A DNA stretch of 63,706 nt, counting the filler, from Reticulomyxa filosa (lineage: Eukaryota > Protista > Foraminifera): the NCBI GenBank assembly GCA_000512085.1. It is 29 parts of 29 records of this genome, joined end to end, with 100 filler letters (N's around TTAATTAATTAA, not from the genome) between each part and the next. Parts side by side here need not be neighbours in the genome. Positions count along the whole stretch, not along the records: positions 52,653 to 58,778 come from ASPP01037484.1; 28 more parts are not named here. One strand, 5' to 3'. The number at the start of each line of letters is the position of its first letter. The first letter of the stretch is position 1. Positions 52,653 through 58,778 of the stretch are shown here, in pieces. Under the pieces are notes generated by a model. It had not been told where the DNA came from, ran no database searches, and saw nothing but the letters and a program-made list of their open reading frames with translations. A program made the position numbers and the translations under genes.

Positions 52653-52695
52653 TGATATCGTTTTAGGCGTTCAGTTTTCTTTGCAGCCTACTGTA
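52653..52695 (-). mobile_element. TA-CAGT MITE end at a contig edge
   Basis: Reverse complement TACAGTAGGCTGCAAAGAAAACTGAACGCCTAAAACGATATCA is near-identical to 48739-48779. Confidence 0.7.
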
Positions 52696-53593
52696 TAAAT
52701 GGTGATATAACCAATAATCATTTATAATTAAAAAAAAGAAAAACTAAAATTTCACAAAAAAAAAAAATAGTTGGAGAATGTGTGAACATAATCAATTACG
52801 GATCTATATTATTATCAAGAAAAGAAATATGAGTTGAAGATCAAGTCGCATTTTGCAAAAGCATAAAAAAATAATTTAAGAAAAATATTTTAAATTTGAA
52901 GTTGTTGCACCGAAAATGAAAAATGCTTAACATGATGTGAATTGACAAAACTCTTAGTGATGCATGTCAGTGTTGATTATGTGGAAAAGTTTGGTCCTGG
53001 TTTGTGTGATGTCAGCGTTCCAAGAAAGGTATGGCCAAATTCCCATAATAACATTGACACGACCAGAGTAACAAAACATCAATCAACAACTAGCATTAGA
53101 GACACTTAGTAACAACAAACACTGTCAACAACAATAATGTGATTAAATGTGACAACTCTAGGGCTTTTCTTAAAGAAAAATAATGTTTTGTTAGCTATAC
53201 AACTCAAAAACTGCAAAGACAAAATATGAAGTTGTCTGTTGATTTTTGGTGTTTAAAATGTACGTGATTTGTTTTGATTATTCATAGCTTTGCTTAGCTT
53301 TATATGTTACGAACAATTTGGTTGGAAGATTAGATTTGTACATTAGCATAGTAGTAGTTGTGTTATACGCATTTTTAATGAAAACATTTTTGGTATTTTT
53401 ATCAATAGATTTTTTATACTTATTTGCAATGGTGCAAGGTGCCACATTAGATTATCTATTTTGTGTTATATGTTAATTGATAGAGGTAGAAAATGAAATT
53501 CATAATGGCATTATTGTGATTGGCTTTTGGCTTCAATTGCTGCATTTATTCACATTACACCAACTTTATTTCTTGTAAACAAAAATAAACAAT

Positions 53594-56034
53594 TTACACA
53601 GATTTTCTTTGTTGAAAAATGATATCATAATCTGTAGTATCTTGACTTTCCACACAATACCATTCACTACTTTTATTGTCTCGAATTTTTGTCCTAATTT
53701 CTTGCAACATTTGTTTGAATGGATAACCGCTCTTATATTTTGATGTGATAATATTTTTCATACATTCACTCAATAATGACAAATCAGCTACTTGATGTCC
53801 TTTTGTAGTTGACCAAATCGTTAAAAATCCATCATCATTATGACCATAGGATGTATCATTTCCTCTCTTTACAATTTCATGAGCCTTTGGAATATTTTCA
53901 CCACGACAAGCATCAATGATAAAAATTTTAGGTAAATCTTTGAACGATTCCATTTTATAGCAATTAAACGATGTACGCATTTCGTCAATTGATATATATT
54001 TTCCATCGCTTGCCACCAACATATTCTCATTTTCTCCATGTCCACAAATAATCATTATTAGTCCATCATAATCATAAGCATTTTTGCGTAGTTTAAAATC
54101 AATCACTAGTTGATCCATGAAATCCTGGACATCGCCTTTTGCCATCTTTGGAGATGGATTGCATACAATTTTATAATTTAATTCTTGTTCAAACAATTGT
54201 TTGAAATTTGTAATGTCCTTTTCTTTCACATTTTTAAGATTTTTCCATTTGCTGTTGTCATCATATTCACTGATAGCAATCATTATTACCAATGCATTTT
54301 TTATGGTTTTTGTTTTCCCAAGTATTATTGGCTGTTGAAATGGAGTCAAAATAATTTTAAATATAGGCTCTTTACTTTCAAATTCTTTCATAACAGCTTC
54401 ATCTGATTCAATAATACTATCTTTCATATTGGCAAATTCAAGCTTTAAATTTTCATTTATCATTTTTTGCACGTCCTTCCATTCTAGACAGTTATGGACT
54501 TGACGAAAAAGTTCTTCGAATGTCACTACGTTCAATTTTATTAATTTTTTTCTTTCATCTACAATCACGTACGCGTTCCACTGTTTTTTAAATTTTCTTT
54601 ATCGTAATTTGAATCAAAAATAAAAACAAAAGTTAGTTAATTAACTACTTCTTTTTCTTCTTTTTCTTCTTTTTCTTCTTTTTGGTTTTTTCTGATCTAT
54701 TCAATGAAGTGATATCAATTATAATTGATTAAATTTTGTAATTGTTAAAAAAAAAAAAAAAAGAAACAAAACATCATCGGAATGAAAATGAATGTAAGCG
54801 TCAATTGCAAAACAAATTGCAGGTATATTTTCATTCTTTACAACATATTTCCATTCACTTTGATTCAATAGCCACTTTCCAAAGTCATGACGTGATAATT
54901 GTTCAAACTTTTCAATCATTTCTTGTTTTTCCTTTTCATTTCTATCTTTCCACCATTTCATCCATTTCTTTTTCTCTTCTTTTTCCTATTTTTATTTTCA
55001 CAATTACAAAGCAATAATCCTTTAGATATAGCCTTAGTTTAAAAAAGACAACTTAACATTGACATCTTCGTCTACTTTCTTTTGTTCATCATTTTCATCA
55101 TTTTCCTCTTTTTTCGTCAGTGCTTTGGTAACTTTTTCATTTGTTCGTTCCCACCATTTCGTCCATTTGCTTCTTTTCTTTGGCTTTTCTTTTAGCTTTT
55201 GTTTTTTGTTTATTATTTTTGTGTTGTTTTATTTTCAAAATATTTAACGATACATACAACCAACAATTTCTTCAAATTCATCTTCTTCATCTTTATTTTC
55301 CTCTCTTTTTTTTCTTAATTGTCGAACAATTTCAAAAAAACACTCTCTATTATTAATGCGTTCTTTTCCACTTGTTTCAAAAAACACTGTTGTTACTCCT
55401 TCTTTTGTCCATTGTTCTGCCAACGCTTGTCCTTGCTCCTTTGACACTACTCTTTGTTCCACTAAGTCGCATTGATTTCCTTTTTTTTTTCAAAACATTA
55501 CCAAACAAATTTTTTTTTTTTTTTTTTAGTTGATCAAAAACAAAAAAAAAAAACCTGCTAAAACAATGACAATTCGATTCAATTCTTTATTTTTAACGCG
55601 GCGAATTTCTTCATAAATTTCTTGAATACGTCGAAATGTCTCATCCGAAGTTATTGCGTAAACTAATAAAAATGATTCCGCATATTGTATATATGTGAAA
55701 TAGGACTCTCCGAAATACGTCACTCGCATCTGCTATGTCCAGTCGTGCCGAAATTCCGTCTACTTGCGTCGTCTTCATACAGAATCCTTTATCCTTTTTT
55801 TTTAGATCAAATTATTAGTTTTAAAAAAGTATTTTCATGAACATTTTTTTTTGCTACGTAACTATTTCACCATATTCATAATTATCATCAATAAAACGCT
55901 TGATCAGCCAACTCTTGCCAGTCACTATTTTTTGAAAAATAATGCAAAGGTCTTATAATTTTTTTTTGATTTAATTATTTCTTACCTCCGCCCAGCACAA
56001 CAATTCTATACGGTTTTTCTTTTGTATTATCCAT
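53594..56034 (-). CDS. Ras-like domain - WxKWW modules - PB1-like - caspase-like (peptidase C14) fusion; exons 56034-55986, 55924-55863, 55793-55555, 55479-55265, 55195-55058, 54985-54773, 54696-54649, 54580-53594
   Basis: Ras part: YRIVVLGGVTGKS, LDIAD, FLLVYAITS, GNQCDL..RVVS, FFETSGK..N..ECFFEIVRQ. Protease part: NALVIMIAISEY, IICGHG, KDLPKIFIIDACRG, DGFLTIWSTTKG. Four phase-0 GT-AG introns of 68-76 nt link the Ras exon to the caspase exon with no stop. One frameshift (or alternative acceptor) near 55718. Confidence 0.75.
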
Positions 56035-57159
56035 TATTATTAATTTTTGATTGAAAAAAAAACTTTTTTTTTAAGTTGGCAGAAGAACCTGTTTACGCAA
56101 CACAAAAAAATTTTACAAAAATTGTACCAATCAAACATTGTATTCTAAATTCTTCAAAATGAAGGTTTTATCATCGAACAAGATACACCAGAAGTCGATA
56201 TTTTTAAATGAAAAAAGATAAACTTATCTGTGTTGTTAGTTGTTAAAATTTTGCTCAAAAAATTGTTTAAAAAGAGATGAAACGAGACAAAAAAAGTTGA
56301 GATGTAGCGAATTTAATGCATTGTTATTAATTGCCTTGATGTAAGCAAAATCAAACATTTTCATTTTTTTCTTTGCATTAAAGCAACGGACAATTAATTT
56401 TTAACCTTGTCTTTTTTTTTTTCTTTATTGCAGAGATATTTTTGGTTGACATTTTACTTCAAAAATAAAAAATGAAAAAAAAATCAAAGGGTGAAAGTTG
56501 ATGCTTTATGTCGACGTATGCAAAATGGGAAATAGTTTCTCAGCCAATCGGTTCAAGTGCAAGTCGGCACTCAAAGCGCGCAAATTATCTTATGTACTAT
56601 TGAGTATTGATTCAACTTTACTCATTTGGAAATAGAGAGACGCTAAGATATTTCGAGATTGTACTTTCCTCAGGGTAATATCTGCTCATGGACACATGTA
56701 AGCAGCCAGGGTACAAGCAAGAATGATACCACAGAGAGCATTTGCGATGGTATTATTATTACAGTAGGATAAAAAAAGAATTGATAGTCATCAGTTTTAG
56801 AAAGAAAATGAAAACAAATCCATGAGTAAGTATTGATTTCATTTTTCCTTTTTGCAAGATTATCGAAATTGTCACTCAATAGATTTTTTCCTTTGCAAAC
56901 TCAAACAAATAACTTTAATTTGGTATGCTTTGTTTTTGGAAAAAGGGTTCAAAATATCAAGGAATATCTAAATGTTATCTCAACAATATATTTAACAAAT
57001 AACCAAATTTCTTCTTTGTTGTATTTTTCTAAGTTGGGTCGTTCCAAAAAATTTAGTATTCTTTTTTACTTTAAAAGAGCTTTTTTTAATCTTATTCTTC
57101 GTTTAAAAAAATTTAAACTATTTCAAAGTCCACTATCCCCAAATACGAATTAAACCACT

Positions 57160-57380
57160 GTTTGAACCATAACATAAATTAATACTACAACAAATGTTAT
57201 TATTGCTCTTTTCTTCCTAATGTAAAAATTTGAAACAAATTATTCCATTATCTTCCTTTTTATCTCCTTTGACATATACAATTTATTCTTATTTGATTGA
57301 ATATCCCAAAAATGAATTGTATTATTACATGATCCAGAATATGTCACATTCGAATTACCAATAATTGAACTTTTTTTTTT
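57160..57380 (-). pseudogene. WD40-repeat relic
   Basis: GNSNVTYSGSCNNTIHFWDIQSNKNKLY followed by stops and frame changes. Confidence 0.6.
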
Positions 57381-57548
57381 AAGACCGACATTGTGACAAT
57401 TATCGCGATATCCTATTGTACAAGTACAATATTTCATATCGCGTCTATCCTTCAATAGTCAGTTTGGATCCAGTTGCATCCTCGATATGACCTCATTCTG
57501 CGAGACATCTTCATCTTCGCGTCTTTTCTCAAATTTTATGACGCCTAG

Positions 57549-57725
57549 TACAGTGGTTTGCAAAAATGTTTATATTTAAAATTACAAGATTTGGAAATAT
57601 TCTTTTTAAAATGAAAAAAAAATTAGGTTTAAATGTTTATATTTCCGAGAAAATCTGTCCTCTTTTACAAGTGCGCCAAATTACAGATCTTTTTTGAATA
57701 AAATTTAAACATTTTTGTTGCTGTA
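57549..57725. mobile_element. Apparently complete 177-bp MITE with terminal inverted repeats and flanking TA
   Basis: Left end TA-CAGTGGTTTGCAAAAATGTTTATATTT; right end (reverse complement) TA-CAGCAACAAAAATGTTTAAATTT. The interior matches the other copies in reverse orientation. Confidence 0.7.
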
Positions 57726-57799
57726 TTCATTATTTTTTAAAATTTGTCCATGAATGAGCAATTCTGTATCAATTTTTTTTTAAATACAGAAAATTTTCT

Positions 57800-58778
57800 T
57801 TAGCTATTGTATTTCATAATAATTTTGTCAAAATCATCGATCCATCCTAATTTTATCTTTAAAGTTCGAATCCAATATTCGATAATATATTTTATTTCTT
57901 TTTTTGACTATTCATTATTTGTCCATCAGCTTTATACAATACAATTTATTTGTATTTCATCAAAATAAATAAACAAATCATTACCAACTGTAAAGGATCC
58001 CATACACGCACTTTAGTCTTCATATGAGTTGATACTTCTGTATTTTTATCGTCTAATCCTCCAATGATGTGTATATGATTGTCTTCTTCACTCCATATTG
58101 CAACACAATGACACAATGGACTGAATAAAGTTTTTTGGAATGTCATCCATTTGTTTTCTCGAATTGAATACTTGTGCACTGATTGTGAAACAACATTTAG
58201 ATTCCATCCACCAAAAAACAAAATGATATCATTTATGCATACATATGCATAACTTCTGAGTGATGTAACAGATAGTTTATGAAATTGAAAAGTGTTGTTA
58301 TCTTCATTATATTTAATTAATAATCCTGTATCTTCACAAAATAACAGCATTTTATAGTTTTGTTTATTTGTTTTCATCATTTCTTGTCCTTGTCCATTTT
58401 CTGAATTTGATACAAAGCAGTGATCTTGGATATAATTACCAGTTGGTAAAGTATCATGTTTAATAAATTGAAATGTATTTAAATCAAACACACTAATGTT
58501 TTTTTGAAAATAAGTTATAAATAACAAATGATTGTTGACTCCACCAATCACTGCACGTGCTCCATTATATTTGTGATTTTCATCTCTTCCAATGATAATT
58601 GGATGATTGTGATTGTCTGTGAAAGGGATCCACTGATTGTAATTGTTGAATTTATTTGATATATCACTCCAAACACTTGCATATTTCATCACCAATGTGT
58701 GTTTATATTTATATCCACCAAAAGACAACAAAGTGATTTCATTATTGTTTTTGTTGCCTATCCTTGTCTATCAGTTTC
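57800..58778 (-). CDS. Kelch-like beta-propeller protein of an expanded family, 5'-truncated, with a short terminal exon 57907-57800
   Basis: LSFGG, AVIGG, ILFFGG..VHKYSIRENKW, IHIIGG; last exon SKKEIKYIIEYWIRTLKIKLGWIDDFDKIIMKYNS*. Confidence 0.82.

What the first reader, a model, noticed from the sequence alone, without database searches (positions are those of the whole stretch)
53594..56034. Ras-like GTPase domain fused in-frame to a caspase-like protease: candidate switch-coupled protease system in a protist
Seen: the ORF track shows separate fragments, but GT-AG introns at 55264-55196, 55057-54986, 54772-54697 and 54648-54581 are all phase 0 and 68-76 nt long. They join the Ras C-terminal exon (..FFEIVRQLRKK..EEI) through three exons to a peptidase-C14 domain with intact CGHG and DACRG, all within one contig. 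Known: animal caspases are activated through CARD/DED prodomains, and caspase-like genes have been noted in Reticulomyxa; I do not know of a characterised small-GTPase-caspase fusion. Inference: the Ras fold acts as a sensor or decoy prodomain (for example bait for GTPase-targeting bacterial effectors) that triggers proteolysis, which would suit local death or sealing in a multinucleate cell.
Basis: partly seen in the sequence, partly recalled or inferred. Interest (0 to 1): 0.9.

Follow-up and report, generated by a model that had tools for sequence, protein, structure and literature searches.

The report
Degenerate Ras copy beside caspase gene
In the foraminifer Reticulomyxa filosa, a worn-out copy of a Ras gene sits directly upstream of an intact caspase-like protease gene and can be read in frame with it, but the Ras part has lost the residues a GTP switch needs, so this is probably a one-off gene rearrangement and not a switch-coupled protease.

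Summary
The piece is R. filosa contig ASPP01037484.1. In detail: the four GT-AG phase-0 introns exist, and the C14 domain is intact and under purifying selection (own-branch dN/dS 0.15).

The switch or sensor reading is not supported:
- **Motifs.** All five G motifs are altered, while the closest homologues are canonical.
- **Frame.** The reading frame breaks at 55712.
- **Own end.** The copy keeps its own stop codon, with a Cys at the CaaX position.
- **Rarity.** Only P0194 carries Ras among the roughly 80 R. filosa C14 models recovered.

The usual gene in this family is Kelch (or TPR, WD40 and others), a K/E-rich linker, a helical module, a PB1-like beta-grasp domain, then the caspase. Here a homologous Kelch ORF lies upstream. 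About 2.8-2.9 kb of extra DNA (a WD40 gene remnant plus the Ras copy) fills what paralogues encode as one linker exon and a 67-nt intron.

A fused transcript is plausible: the L1 exon has no start codon, in-frame paths exceed chance, and there is little room for a terminator. It is unproven, because no RNA run was listed. Interest is modest. The family's cassette architecture is the more notable result.

The parts
57946..58767 (-). Kelch beta-propeller ORF, cut by the contig edge. It is homologous to the N-terminal Kelch domain of Kelch-caspase paralogues and ends in a short novel tail after ..HMKTKVRVW.
   Evidence: Pfam Kelch_1 4.3e-6. 48-57% identity to the Kelch parts of P0081, P0058, P0111, P0047, P0064 and P0062. 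DNA blocks 58756-58000 match L002, L003 and L006. Own-branch dN/dS is 0.38, like the paralogues. A separate 296-aa NCBI model covers it.
57106..57886 (-). Decayed remnant of a WD40-repeat gene: two short blocks in the right order and orientation.
   Evidence: blastn: 57886-57810 and 57364-57106 match the WD40 genes of L002 (4746-4670, 3741-3493) and L004 (8994-9132) at 72-79% (gene tables). No Pfam hit remains.
55984..56034 (-). Ras exon 1 (start codon at 56034, beta-1 strand, start of the P-loop). The GT at 55985-55984 begins the first intron, so the exon proper ends at 55986.
   Evidence: tblastn of P0208 and P0212; sequence.
55863..55924 (-). Ras exon 2 (..TGKS.., alpha-1 helix). The joined P-loop reads LGGVTGKS, one residue shorter than GGGGVGKS.
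   Evidence: Identity to P0208 is 7 of 20.
55556..55793 (-). Ras exon 3. Bases 55793-55713 are in one frame (beta-2/beta-3, DIAD in place of DTAG). There is one extra base at 55712. Bases 55711-55556 are in another frame (switch II remnant to beta-5). The last base of the exon (55555) starts a split Gly codon.
   Evidence: Frames differ within one uninterrupted stretch. The stretch is 5 nt shorter than homologue L007 between the DG and FLLV anchors. Pfam Ras 3.6e-7 on the second part. The NCBI model skips the first part with an atypical 133-nt intron.
55244..55479 (-). Ras exon 4 (NQCD, ETSGK, alpha-5 helix, acidic tail). Its own stop is at 55246-55244 after ..IVGCMYR, with Cys at the -4 position.
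   Evidence: Pfam Ras 6.5e-9. 41 of 58 identical to P0208. The terminus aligns codon for codon with the CCKML-stop of L007.
55058..55195 (-). Linker exon L1. It is K/E-rich, carries a KWTKWW..NEK motif, and has no ATG in its 57-codon open frame. It is a partial copy of the start of L2 followed by linker-like sequence.
   Evidence: 59-nt direct repeat 55110-55168 against 54909-54967 at 71%. Open frame. GTTAAGT donor at 55057.
54773..54985 (-). L2 exon: a conserved helical module (KWMKWW...WLL..S.WK...I.AI) shared by family members with Kelch, TPR, ARM-like and other N-termini. The acceptor at 54986 is at a conserved intron position.
   Evidence: 33 paralogue hits. Alignment A1. Intron at the same position in L002 and L004. 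Four helices in the AF2 model with pLDDT about 90. No Pfam or fold match.
54649..54696 (-). Short K/E-rich spacer exon of variable length in the family.
   Evidence: the spacer column block varies between paralogues.
54293..54580 (-). PB1/CIDE-N-like beta-grasp domain, the first ~96 codons of the last exon.
   Evidence: AF2 pLDDT about 90. VIA-align top hits are PB1 domains at Z 8.0-8.3 and CIDE-N at Z 7.6-7.8. Foldseek shows PB1, CIDE-N and RBD weakly. ESM Atlas neighbours are mostly PF00564 PB1. No Pfam hit.
53594..54292 (-). Caspase-like Peptidase_C14 domain (p20 + p10). His codon 54040-54038, Cys codon 53908-53906, stop 53596-53594.
   Evidence: Pfam 4.2e-19. Profile against PDB: caspase-3, 3e-11. 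Foldseek: caspase-8, -3, CED-3 and -9 at 1e-11 to 1e-10. Own-branch dN/dS 0.15.

Best explanation
This is a rearranged member of R. filosa's large family of caspase-like genes. The family's normal gene has four parts: an N-terminal repeat domain (usually a Kelch propeller), a K/E-rich linker, a conserved cassette, and within that cassette a helical L2 module, a PB1-like beta-grasp domain and a caspase-3-like protease.

In this copy, about 2.8-2.9 kb of foreign DNA lies inside what was the linker exon. That DNA carries a decayed WD40 gene piece and a complete, intron-containing Ras/Rap-type gene. It separates the Kelch part from the cassette.

The cassette is intact and selectively constrained. 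The Ras copy is not a working GTPase: its nucleotide-binding and switch motifs are lost, its frame is broken in the assembly, and the prenylation box at its retained ancestral stop is spoiled.

The 637-aa Ras-caspase protein is the public ab initio model. A chimeric transcript that starts at the Ras promoter and splices out the Ras stop codon is plausible. It would be the simplest way to give the start-less L1 and L2 exons an initiation codon (inference). If it is made, the Ras-derived part acts as a GTPase-dead leader or appendage, not as a GTP switch.

The protease would then be controlled as in its paralogues, presumably by PB1-like-driven oligomerisation. This last step is inferred from the fold only.
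For: **Identity and model:**

**Family architecture.**
- Kelch in 16 and TPR in 5 of 53 long homologues; TRAF zinc finger, HSP70, MATH and kinase domains occur as well. Ras occurs only in P0194.
- No Ras similarity in 188 family proteins.

**Insertion.**
- The Kelch block 58756-58000 and the L2 block from 55030 are about 100 nt apart in L002 but about 2970 nt apart here.
- WD40 gene fragments lie in between.
- In P0058 the Kelch exon and the L2 exon are joined by a 67-nt intron.

**Ras decay.**
- The motifs differ from the canonical homologues P0208-P0216.
- Identity to P0208 by exon is 50, 35, 37, 46 and 71%.
- The frame changes within exon 3.
- There is a net 5-nt length difference between anchors, and the stop and Cys are positionally conserved.

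**Cassette constraint:** dN/dS is 0.15 on its own branch, with no stop in 328 codons.

**Plausibility of fusion.**
- L1 has a 57-codon open frame without ATG and contains an L2-like repeat.
- The acceptor before L2 is conserved.
- There are 24 in-frame paths, against 7% of shuffles with any.
- Donor-like GT sites at 55253 and 55248 overlap the Ras terminus.

**PB1-like fold:**
Against: - No RNA data could be obtained, so neither the chimeric transcript nor its absence is shown.
- The frame break could be a one-base assembly error on top of a true two-codon deletion. In that case the Ras ORF would be continuous.
- The Ras N-terminal half has diverged a great deal without acquiring a stop codon. 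That fits a translated pseudo-GTPase better than free decay (my estimate, not a formal test).
- The timing of the insertion relative to the constraint measured on the Kelch and C14 branches is unknown.
- The R. filosa genome could not be searched for other copies of this Ras or of the inserted segment.
Confidence: 0.5

Rival explanations
1. There are two separate genes, and the fusion is an annotation artefact. The Ras copy (gene or pseudogene) ends at its own stop at 55244. The caspase gene is transcribed on its own and starts at the ATG at 54961 inside the L2 exon, or is no longer expressed. The in-frame link exists only because L1 is a relic of the old linker exon.
For: - The ancestral stop and the CaaX-position Cys are retained.
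- The frame break prevents translation from the Ras ATG from reaching the cassette.
- Several paralogue models start at the equivalent Met (P0002, P0009, P0060, P0025).
- The predictor also mis-split what is probably one Kelch-caspase gene in L003, so its gene boundaries in this family are unreliable.
Against: - The Met in the KW[MTILV]KWW motif is not conserved: it is T, I, L or V in other members.
- The intron before L2 is conserved, so L2 is normally an internal exon.
- Only about 55 nt separate the Ras stop from the L1 open frame, which leaves little room for a terminator and a promoter.
- L1 has stayed open for 57 codons in an AT-rich genome.
Confidence: 0.27
2. One reading: a translated Ras-derived pseudo-GTPase domain replaces the Kelch sensor. 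It acts as a binding module or an integrated decoy, for example for effectors that target Ras/Rap proteins, and triggers the PB1-like-caspase cassette.
For: - The family swaps N-terminal domains on a constant cassette, so a new N-terminal domain is in character.
- The C-terminal lobe is well kept (71% identity) while the N-terminal lobe has diverged strongly without any stop codon. This is the reverse of normal Ras conservation and unlike uniform decay.
- In-frame splicing paths exceed chance.
Against: - The frame break at 55712.
- It is a singleton with no paralogue or orthologue.
- The stop and the Cys at -4 are retained.
- There is no transcript or protein evidence.
- Nothing here tests binding.
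Confidence: 0.13
3. The contig is mis-assembled: parts of different paralogous loci were joined through low-complexity or repeated cassette sequence, so the Ras-caspase adjacency does not exist in the genome.
For: - The family has many copies at 70-83% DNA identity, plus K/E-coding low-complexity repeats.
- The contig is short (6126 bp) and comes from a draft assembly.
Against: - The L1/L2 repeat is only 71% identical over 59 nt, too weak to mislead an assembler.
- No near-identical repeat lies at the proposed junctions.
- Reads could not be examined.
Confidence: 0.07

Closest known systems
R. filosa Kelch-caspase paralogues, e.g. RFI_21820 (P0058, 781 aa) and RFI_35630 (P0189)
   Same: They share the same cassette. 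It comprises the L2 exon(s) with the conserved upstream intron, the PB1-like beta-grasp domain, and a C14 domain 60-77% identical. A homologous Kelch ORF lies upstream in the window.
   Different: In the paralogues the Kelch exon is spliced directly to L2 through a 67-nt intron. In the window about 2.9 kb holding a WD40 remnant and a Ras copy intervenes, and the public model starts at the Ras ATG.
Canonical Ras/Rap-type small GTPases, nearest P0208-P0210 (202 aa, JGI metatranscriptome, CaaX CCKML)
   Same: PF00071 fold. The C-terminal lobe is 71% identical. Total length, stop position and the Cys at -4 correspond.
   Different: Key residues of all five G motifs are changed, there is a frame break in switch II, and the CaaX box is spoiled (CMYR).
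Animal initiator caspases (caspase-8, caspase-9, CED-3)
   Same: They are the best sequence and structure matches for the protease domain, with the His-Cys dyad and the ACRG motif. Both have an N-terminal interaction domain next to the protease.
   Different: - There is no CARD or DED. A PB1/CIDE-N-like beta-grasp domain sits in that place.
- The Asp-binding residues of caspase-3 (R64, Q161, R207) have no conserved counterpart. The position of Q161 holds a conserved Asp, as in metacaspases (read from the alignment; the role of these residues is established knowledge). Asp specificity is therefore doubtful.
Multidomain bacterial orthocaspases/metacaspases and STAND-type death or immunity proteins with WD40/TPR sensors (Kaur et al. 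2021, PMC8195603)
   Same: The logic is the same: a variable repeat sensor coupled to a C14 effector in a lineage-specific expansion. An nSTAND3-like gene and WD40 genes lie next to family members.
   Different: No STAND NTPase lies in the same polypeptide, and the coupling module is a PB1-like domain. The relation is one of analogy only.
ROCO / AP-GTPase (ROC-COR) death-associated proteins such as DAPK1
   Same: A Ras-like GTPase domain sits in one chain with a cell-death effector (PMC8195603).
   Different: There is no COR domain. The GTPase here belongs to the classical Ras/Rap branch and is degenerate.

Membership tests
Ras family small GTPase (PF00071) | Significant match to the family profile | tested here: met
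   P0194 scores 5.5e-22, but only over profile positions 67-161. Single exons score 3.6e-7 and 6.5e-9.
Ras family small GTPase (PF00071) | G1 P-loop GxxxxGK[ST] | tested here: not met
   The joined exons read LGGVTGKS, one residue shorter than GGGGVGKS of P0208, and the first Gly is replaced.
Ras family small GTPase (PF00071) | G2 switch-I Thr and G3 DxxG (with the catalytic Gln) | tested here: not met
   YDPTIEDSY corresponds to a diverged YEYGEIDKGF with no Thr at that position. DTAGQ corresponds to DASDV, preceded by DIAD.
Ras family small GTPase (PF00071) | G4 NKxD and G5 SAK | tested here: inconclusive
   NQCD and ETSGK each carry one change. Asn and Asp are kept.
Ras family small GTPase (PF00071) | Continuous reading frame through the G domain | tested here: not met
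   The frame changes at 55712 within one exon, and the stretch is 5 nt shorter than the homologue between anchors. A sequencing error cannot be excluded.
Ras family small GTPase (PF00071) | C-terminal CaaX prenylation box | tested here: inconclusive
   The Cys is kept at -4, but the box reads CMYR against CKML/CTML in the homologues.
Caspases (Peptidase C14A) | C14 profile match and caspase-hemoglobinase fold with p20 and p10 | tested here: met
   Pfam 4.2e-19. AF2 pLDDT 83. Foldseek finds caspase-8, -3 and CED-3 at about 1e-11.
Caspases (Peptidase C14A) | Catalytic His-Cys dyad | tested here: met
   GHG and ACRG are present. H181 and C225 are at least 90% conserved in 34 paralogues.
Caspases (Peptidase C14A) | S1 pocket for Asp (caspase-3 R64, Q161, R207) | tested here: not met
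   In the profile alignment to 1nmq_A, Q161 aligns with a conserved Asp, the YSWR segment with R207 is a gap, and the R64 position is variable. The role of these residues is established knowledge.
Caspases (Peptidase C14A) | Death-fold prodomain (CARD/DED) in initiators | tested here: not met
   The N-terminal neighbour of the protease domain is a beta-grasp domain. The L2 helices match no death fold.
PB1 domain (PF00564) | Beta-grasp fold of PB1 type | tested here: met
   The top VIA-align hits are the MEKK3, MAP2K5, Bem1 and Par6 PB1 domains at Z 8.0-8.3, rmsd 2.4-4.0. Most ESM Atlas neighbours carry PF00564. CIDE-N and RA domains score within 1 Z unit, so the subtype is open.
PB1 domain (PF00564) | Profile match, and the OPCA acidic motif or the conserved beta-1 Lys | tested here: inconclusive
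   No Pfam hit at E<=1. Only an ..ESDE(D/A)V.. segment resembles the second half of OPCA.
ROCO (ROC-COR) proteins | COR domain following the GTPase | tested here: not met
   Pfam finds only Ras and Peptidase_C14 in P0194.

The most novel reading that the evidence does not exclude
The frame break is an assembly error, and the locus encodes a translated pseudo-GTPase. This Ras/Rap-derived domain has been freed from nucleotide cycling and integrated as bait in place of the usual Kelch sensor, on a PB1-like-caspase cassette. It would be a protist counterpart of the integrated decoys of plant NLRs, guarding Ras/Rap proteins against effectors of intracellular bacteria.
Probability: 0.1. Interest if true: 0.8.

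Novelty: new variant of a known kind. Interest (0 to 1): 0.35.

Why it matters
As a GTP-switched caspase this would have been a new regulatory principle, but the evidence here speaks against that.

Two things remain of value. First, the locus is a clear example of how this foraminifer reshuffles N-terminal domains onto a constant protease cassette, through symmetric exons and K/E-rich linkers. Second, the cassette itself has not been described in the papers I could search. It consists of a helical module, a PB1-like domain and a caspase-3-like protease with a non-caspase S1 pocket. It is attached to Kelch, TPR, WD40, TRAF, MATH, kinase or HSP70 domains in about 80 gene models or more.

That family bears on the origin of caspase activation platforms and on possible cell-death or immunity systems in giant syncytial protists.

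Tried and rejected
- **RNA evidence.** The look-up of sequencing runs (kind rna) listed no run, so read laying could not be used.
- **Relatives elsewhere.** Scans of metagenome contigs with the cassette alignments A1 and A2 found no relative.
- **Sequence and fold searches.** Pfam gives nothing for L1, L2, the beta-grasp domain or the WD40 remnant. Foldseek on the L2 + beta-grasp model gave only weak rows with E >= 0.01. The ESM Atlas gave no fold for L2.
- **Donor matrix.** A small donor matrix does not discriminate well: 49 of 275 GT sites score at least as high as the site at 55248.
- **Literature.** The R. filosa genome paper is not in the held library. One literature search was too broad to be useful.
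- **Single Kelch-Ras-caspase gene.** I considered and rejected one gene with a 1.9-kb intron, because the introns in these models are 28-133 nt.
- **Retrocopy origin of the Ras.** Rejected, because the copy keeps three introns.
- **Joined model.** I did not search with a spliced model of my own. Exons were searched one by one by reference, and the public model P0194 was used by its id.
Full report
**Identity of the piece.** The 6126-bp piece (52653-58778) is contig ASPP01037484.1 of the Reticulomyxa filosa assembly GCA_000512085.1. NCBI annotates two genes on the minus strand. One is a 296-aa Kelch protein (58767-57800). The other is a 637-aa protein, P0194, named "ras-related protein Rap-1A", which carries PF00071 and PF00656. 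The fusion is therefore already a public ab initio gene model. I found no paper that discusses it. The four papers that mention Reticulomyxa caspases treat only the protease domain.

**Observation.** Pfam finds Ras on two exons and Peptidase_C14 on the last exon. The His of CGHG and the Cys of DACRG are present and nearly invariant in 34 paralogues.

As a chance control, I enumerated all two-intron GT-AG paths (introns of 50-120 nt) from the Ras frame to the conserved acceptor at 54986. The real sequence has 24. Only 7% of 1000 dinucleotide shuffles have any. The link is therefore more than chance, mainly because the intervening L1 segment is a 57-codon open frame.

**The Ras part.** tblastn with the nearest homologues places four exons at 56034-55986, 55924-55863, 55793-55555 and 55479-55244. 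The nearest homologues are 202-aa stand-alone GTPases from a JGI metatranscriptome (P0208-P0210). One of their contigs (L007) shares a perfect 24-nt stretch with the window, so it comes from a close relative. These homologues have canonical motifs: GGGGVGKS, YDPTIEDSY, DTAGQ, NKCD, ETSAK and a CaaX box. The window copy differs in each:
- The P-loop reads LGGVTGKS.
- No Thr remains in the diverged switch I.
- DIAD/DASDV replaces DTAGQ.
- NKCD has become NQCD, and ETSAK has become ETSGK.

Identity to P0208 by exon is 50, 35, 37 and 46%, and 71% for the core of exon 4. The normally most conserved N-terminal lobe is thus the most diverged.

Within exon 3 the reading frame changes at 55712. Between two firm anchors (DG and FLLV) the window is 5 nt shorter than L007. 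The NCBI model avoids the break by skipping 27 codons (beta-2/beta-3 and G3) with a 133-nt intron, twice the usual length.

The copy keeps its own stop at 55246-55244. The last six codons align one to one with those of L007, including the Cys four codons before the stop, but the box now reads CMYR. On any reading, this is not a working GTP switch. Whether the frame break is real or a one-base assembly error on top of a two-codon deletion cannot be decided without reads.

**The protease part and its family.** The last exon (54580-53594) is 75-77% identical to the closest paralogues. On its own branch it shows 48.5 synonymous against 32.5 non-synonymous changes, a dN/dS of 0.15, the same as its relatives. 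It is therefore a constrained gene.

Its best solved relatives are animal caspases, by sequence profile (caspase-3, 3e-11) and by fold (caspase-8, -3, CED-3, -9). This agrees with Klim et al. 2018 (PMC5982838). In the profile alignment, however, the caspase-3 residues that bind the P1 Asp have no conserved counterpart. The position of Q161 holds a conserved Asp, as in metacaspases (together with established knowledge of these residues). Asp specificity should therefore not be assumed.

Upstream of the protease lie two conserved modules without Pfam matches:
- **A beta-grasp domain of about 95 aa.** It is modelled confidently. Its best structural neighbours are PB1 domains (Z 8.0-8.3), closely followed by CIDE-N and RA-type domains.
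- **A four-helix module of about 65 aa (L2).** It has the signature KW[MTILV]KWW...WLL...WK and no recognisable fold match.

L2 is encoded by a symmetric exon of 71-76 codons. The intron at its 5' end is conserved, and some members have two L2 copies.

R. filosa has at least about 80 annotated models of this family. Among 53 long homologues, 16 carry Kelch propellers and 5 carry TPR arrays. TRAF zinc finger, MATH, protein kinase, HSP70 and ARM-like domains occur as well. Ras occurs only in P0194. None of 188 family proteins has similarity to the Ras exons.

**History of the locus.** The Kelch ORF upstream in the window (58767-57946) is 48-57% identical to the Kelch domains of the Kelch-caspase paralogues. 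It evolves at the same rate ratio as they do (0.38 against 0.36).

At the DNA level, the Kelch block (58756-58000) and the L2 block (from 55030) are about 100 nt apart in paralogue L002 but about 2970 nt apart in the window. In P0058 the Kelch exon runs through a K/E-rich linker and is joined to L2 by a 67-nt intron.

The extra DNA in the window contains three things. Two fragments of a WD40 gene lie in the correct order and orientation (57886-57810, 57364-57106). The Ras copy follows with its start codon, three introns and stop. Last comes L1, which holds a 59-nt, 71%-identical repeat of the start of L2, followed by linker-like sequence.

Homology to the paralogues' Kelch exon stops right after ..HMKTKV.., and the ORF then ends in a short unrelated tail. 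The simplest reading is that a Kelch-cassette gene was split in its linker exon by an insertion or a more complex rearrangement. No terminal repeats or target duplications were found.

**Is the fusion expressed?**

Evidence for:
- L2 is normally an internal exon, and its frame is closed just upstream.
- The Met in its motif is not conserved in the family.
- L1 is open for 57 codons and has no ATG.
- The L1-L2 intron has the local consensus donor GTTAAG and is partly homologous to the paralogue intron.
- Only about 55 nt separate the Ras stop from the L1 frame.
- Donor-like sites at 55253 and 55248 (the latter is GTTAAATA and includes the stop codon) give in-frame introns of 60-84 nt.

Evidence against:
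- The frame break keeps the Ras start codon from reaching the cassette.
- The ancestral stop is retained.
- The predictor's gene boundaries in this family are unreliable. In L003 it splits a probable Kelch-caspase gene at a 147-nt gap.
- No RNA run was listed.

I put the chance of a chimeric transcript near one half, and the chance of a GTP-regulated protease at a few per cent.

**Mechanism.** Three things are shown: the domain content, the catalytic dyad and the selective constraint on the cassette. The rest is inferred. In the family, a variable repeat domain would recognise a ligand, the PB1-like domain (PB1 and CIDE-N domains form head-to-tail oligomers) would bring protease domains together, and proximity would activate them, as CARD or DED assemblies do for initiator caspases. 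In this copy the sensor has been uncoupled. The Ras-derived sequence most likely supplies a promoter, a start codon and an inert or newly binding N-terminal appendage.

**Comparison and novelty.**
- The Ras part fails most defining tests of an active Ras GTPase.
- The protease passes the fold and dyad tests of C14A caspases but fails the S1-pocket and death-fold-prodomain tests.
- ROCO membership fails for lack of a COR domain.

The architecture is a singleton variant within a family of multidomain caspase-like proteins, so I rate it a new variant of a known kind, of modest interest. The family-level cassette deserves its own follow-up.

Exons were searched singly by reference, and the public model P0194 was used by its id. 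Earlier findings were not open.

Noticed in passing
window 53594-54985; loci L002-L006: R. filosa has about 80 or more caspase-like gene models built from one cassette: helical L2 exon(s), a PB1/CIDE-N-like beta-grasp domain, and a caspase-3-like C14 domain. The cassette is attached to Kelch, TPR, WD40, TRAF zinc-finger, MATH, kinase, HSP70 or ARM-like N-termini. The papers I could search do not describe this architecture.
   Followed up: partly
window 53906-53914 (DACRG) and the p10 region 53800-53850: The caspase-3 Asp-binding residues R64, Q161 and R207 are not conserved in the family. A conserved Asp sits two residues before the catalytic Cys, as in metacaspases. A conserved ..RG..GHNDDGF.. 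segment lies in the low-confidence p20-p10 linker. P1 specificity may therefore be basic, not Asp.
   Followed up: partly
L003 4951-6277 and 6424-7681: A Kelch gene model and a caspase model (P0002) are separated by only 147 nt on the same strand. This is probably one Kelch-caspase gene split by the predictor.
   Followed up: no
L004 108-3181 and 6540-9481; L002 3518-4886: Family members sit next to an nSTAND3-like gene (weak Pfam hit) and large WD40 genes. This hints at clusters of immunity-like genes.
   Followed up: no
L007 (JGI sample 3300030741, 942-nt contig): This is an intron-less transcript of a canonical Ras with a CaaX box. It has 35% GC and a perfect 24-nt match to window 55330-55307. 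A close relative of R. filosa was therefore present in that metatranscriptome.
   Followed up: partly
L005 56-259 (P0001) and window 54963-54949, 55164-55150: The annotated start MDEMV.. of P0001 is the KWMKWW motif read one base out of frame. The same out-of-frame ATG occurs at both motif copies in the window, so some family models probably begin at false starts.
   Followed up: no
P0098 (666 aa): An HSP70 ATPase domain (residues 1-476) is followed by the start of the beta-grasp domain at 577-666, where the model ends. This may be an HSP70-cassette fusion or a merged model.
   Followed up: no
window 56035-57105: About 1 kb between the WD40 remnant and the Ras start has no ORF with a Pfam match on either strand. 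It is presumably the promoter region that came with the Ras copy.
   Followed up: partly
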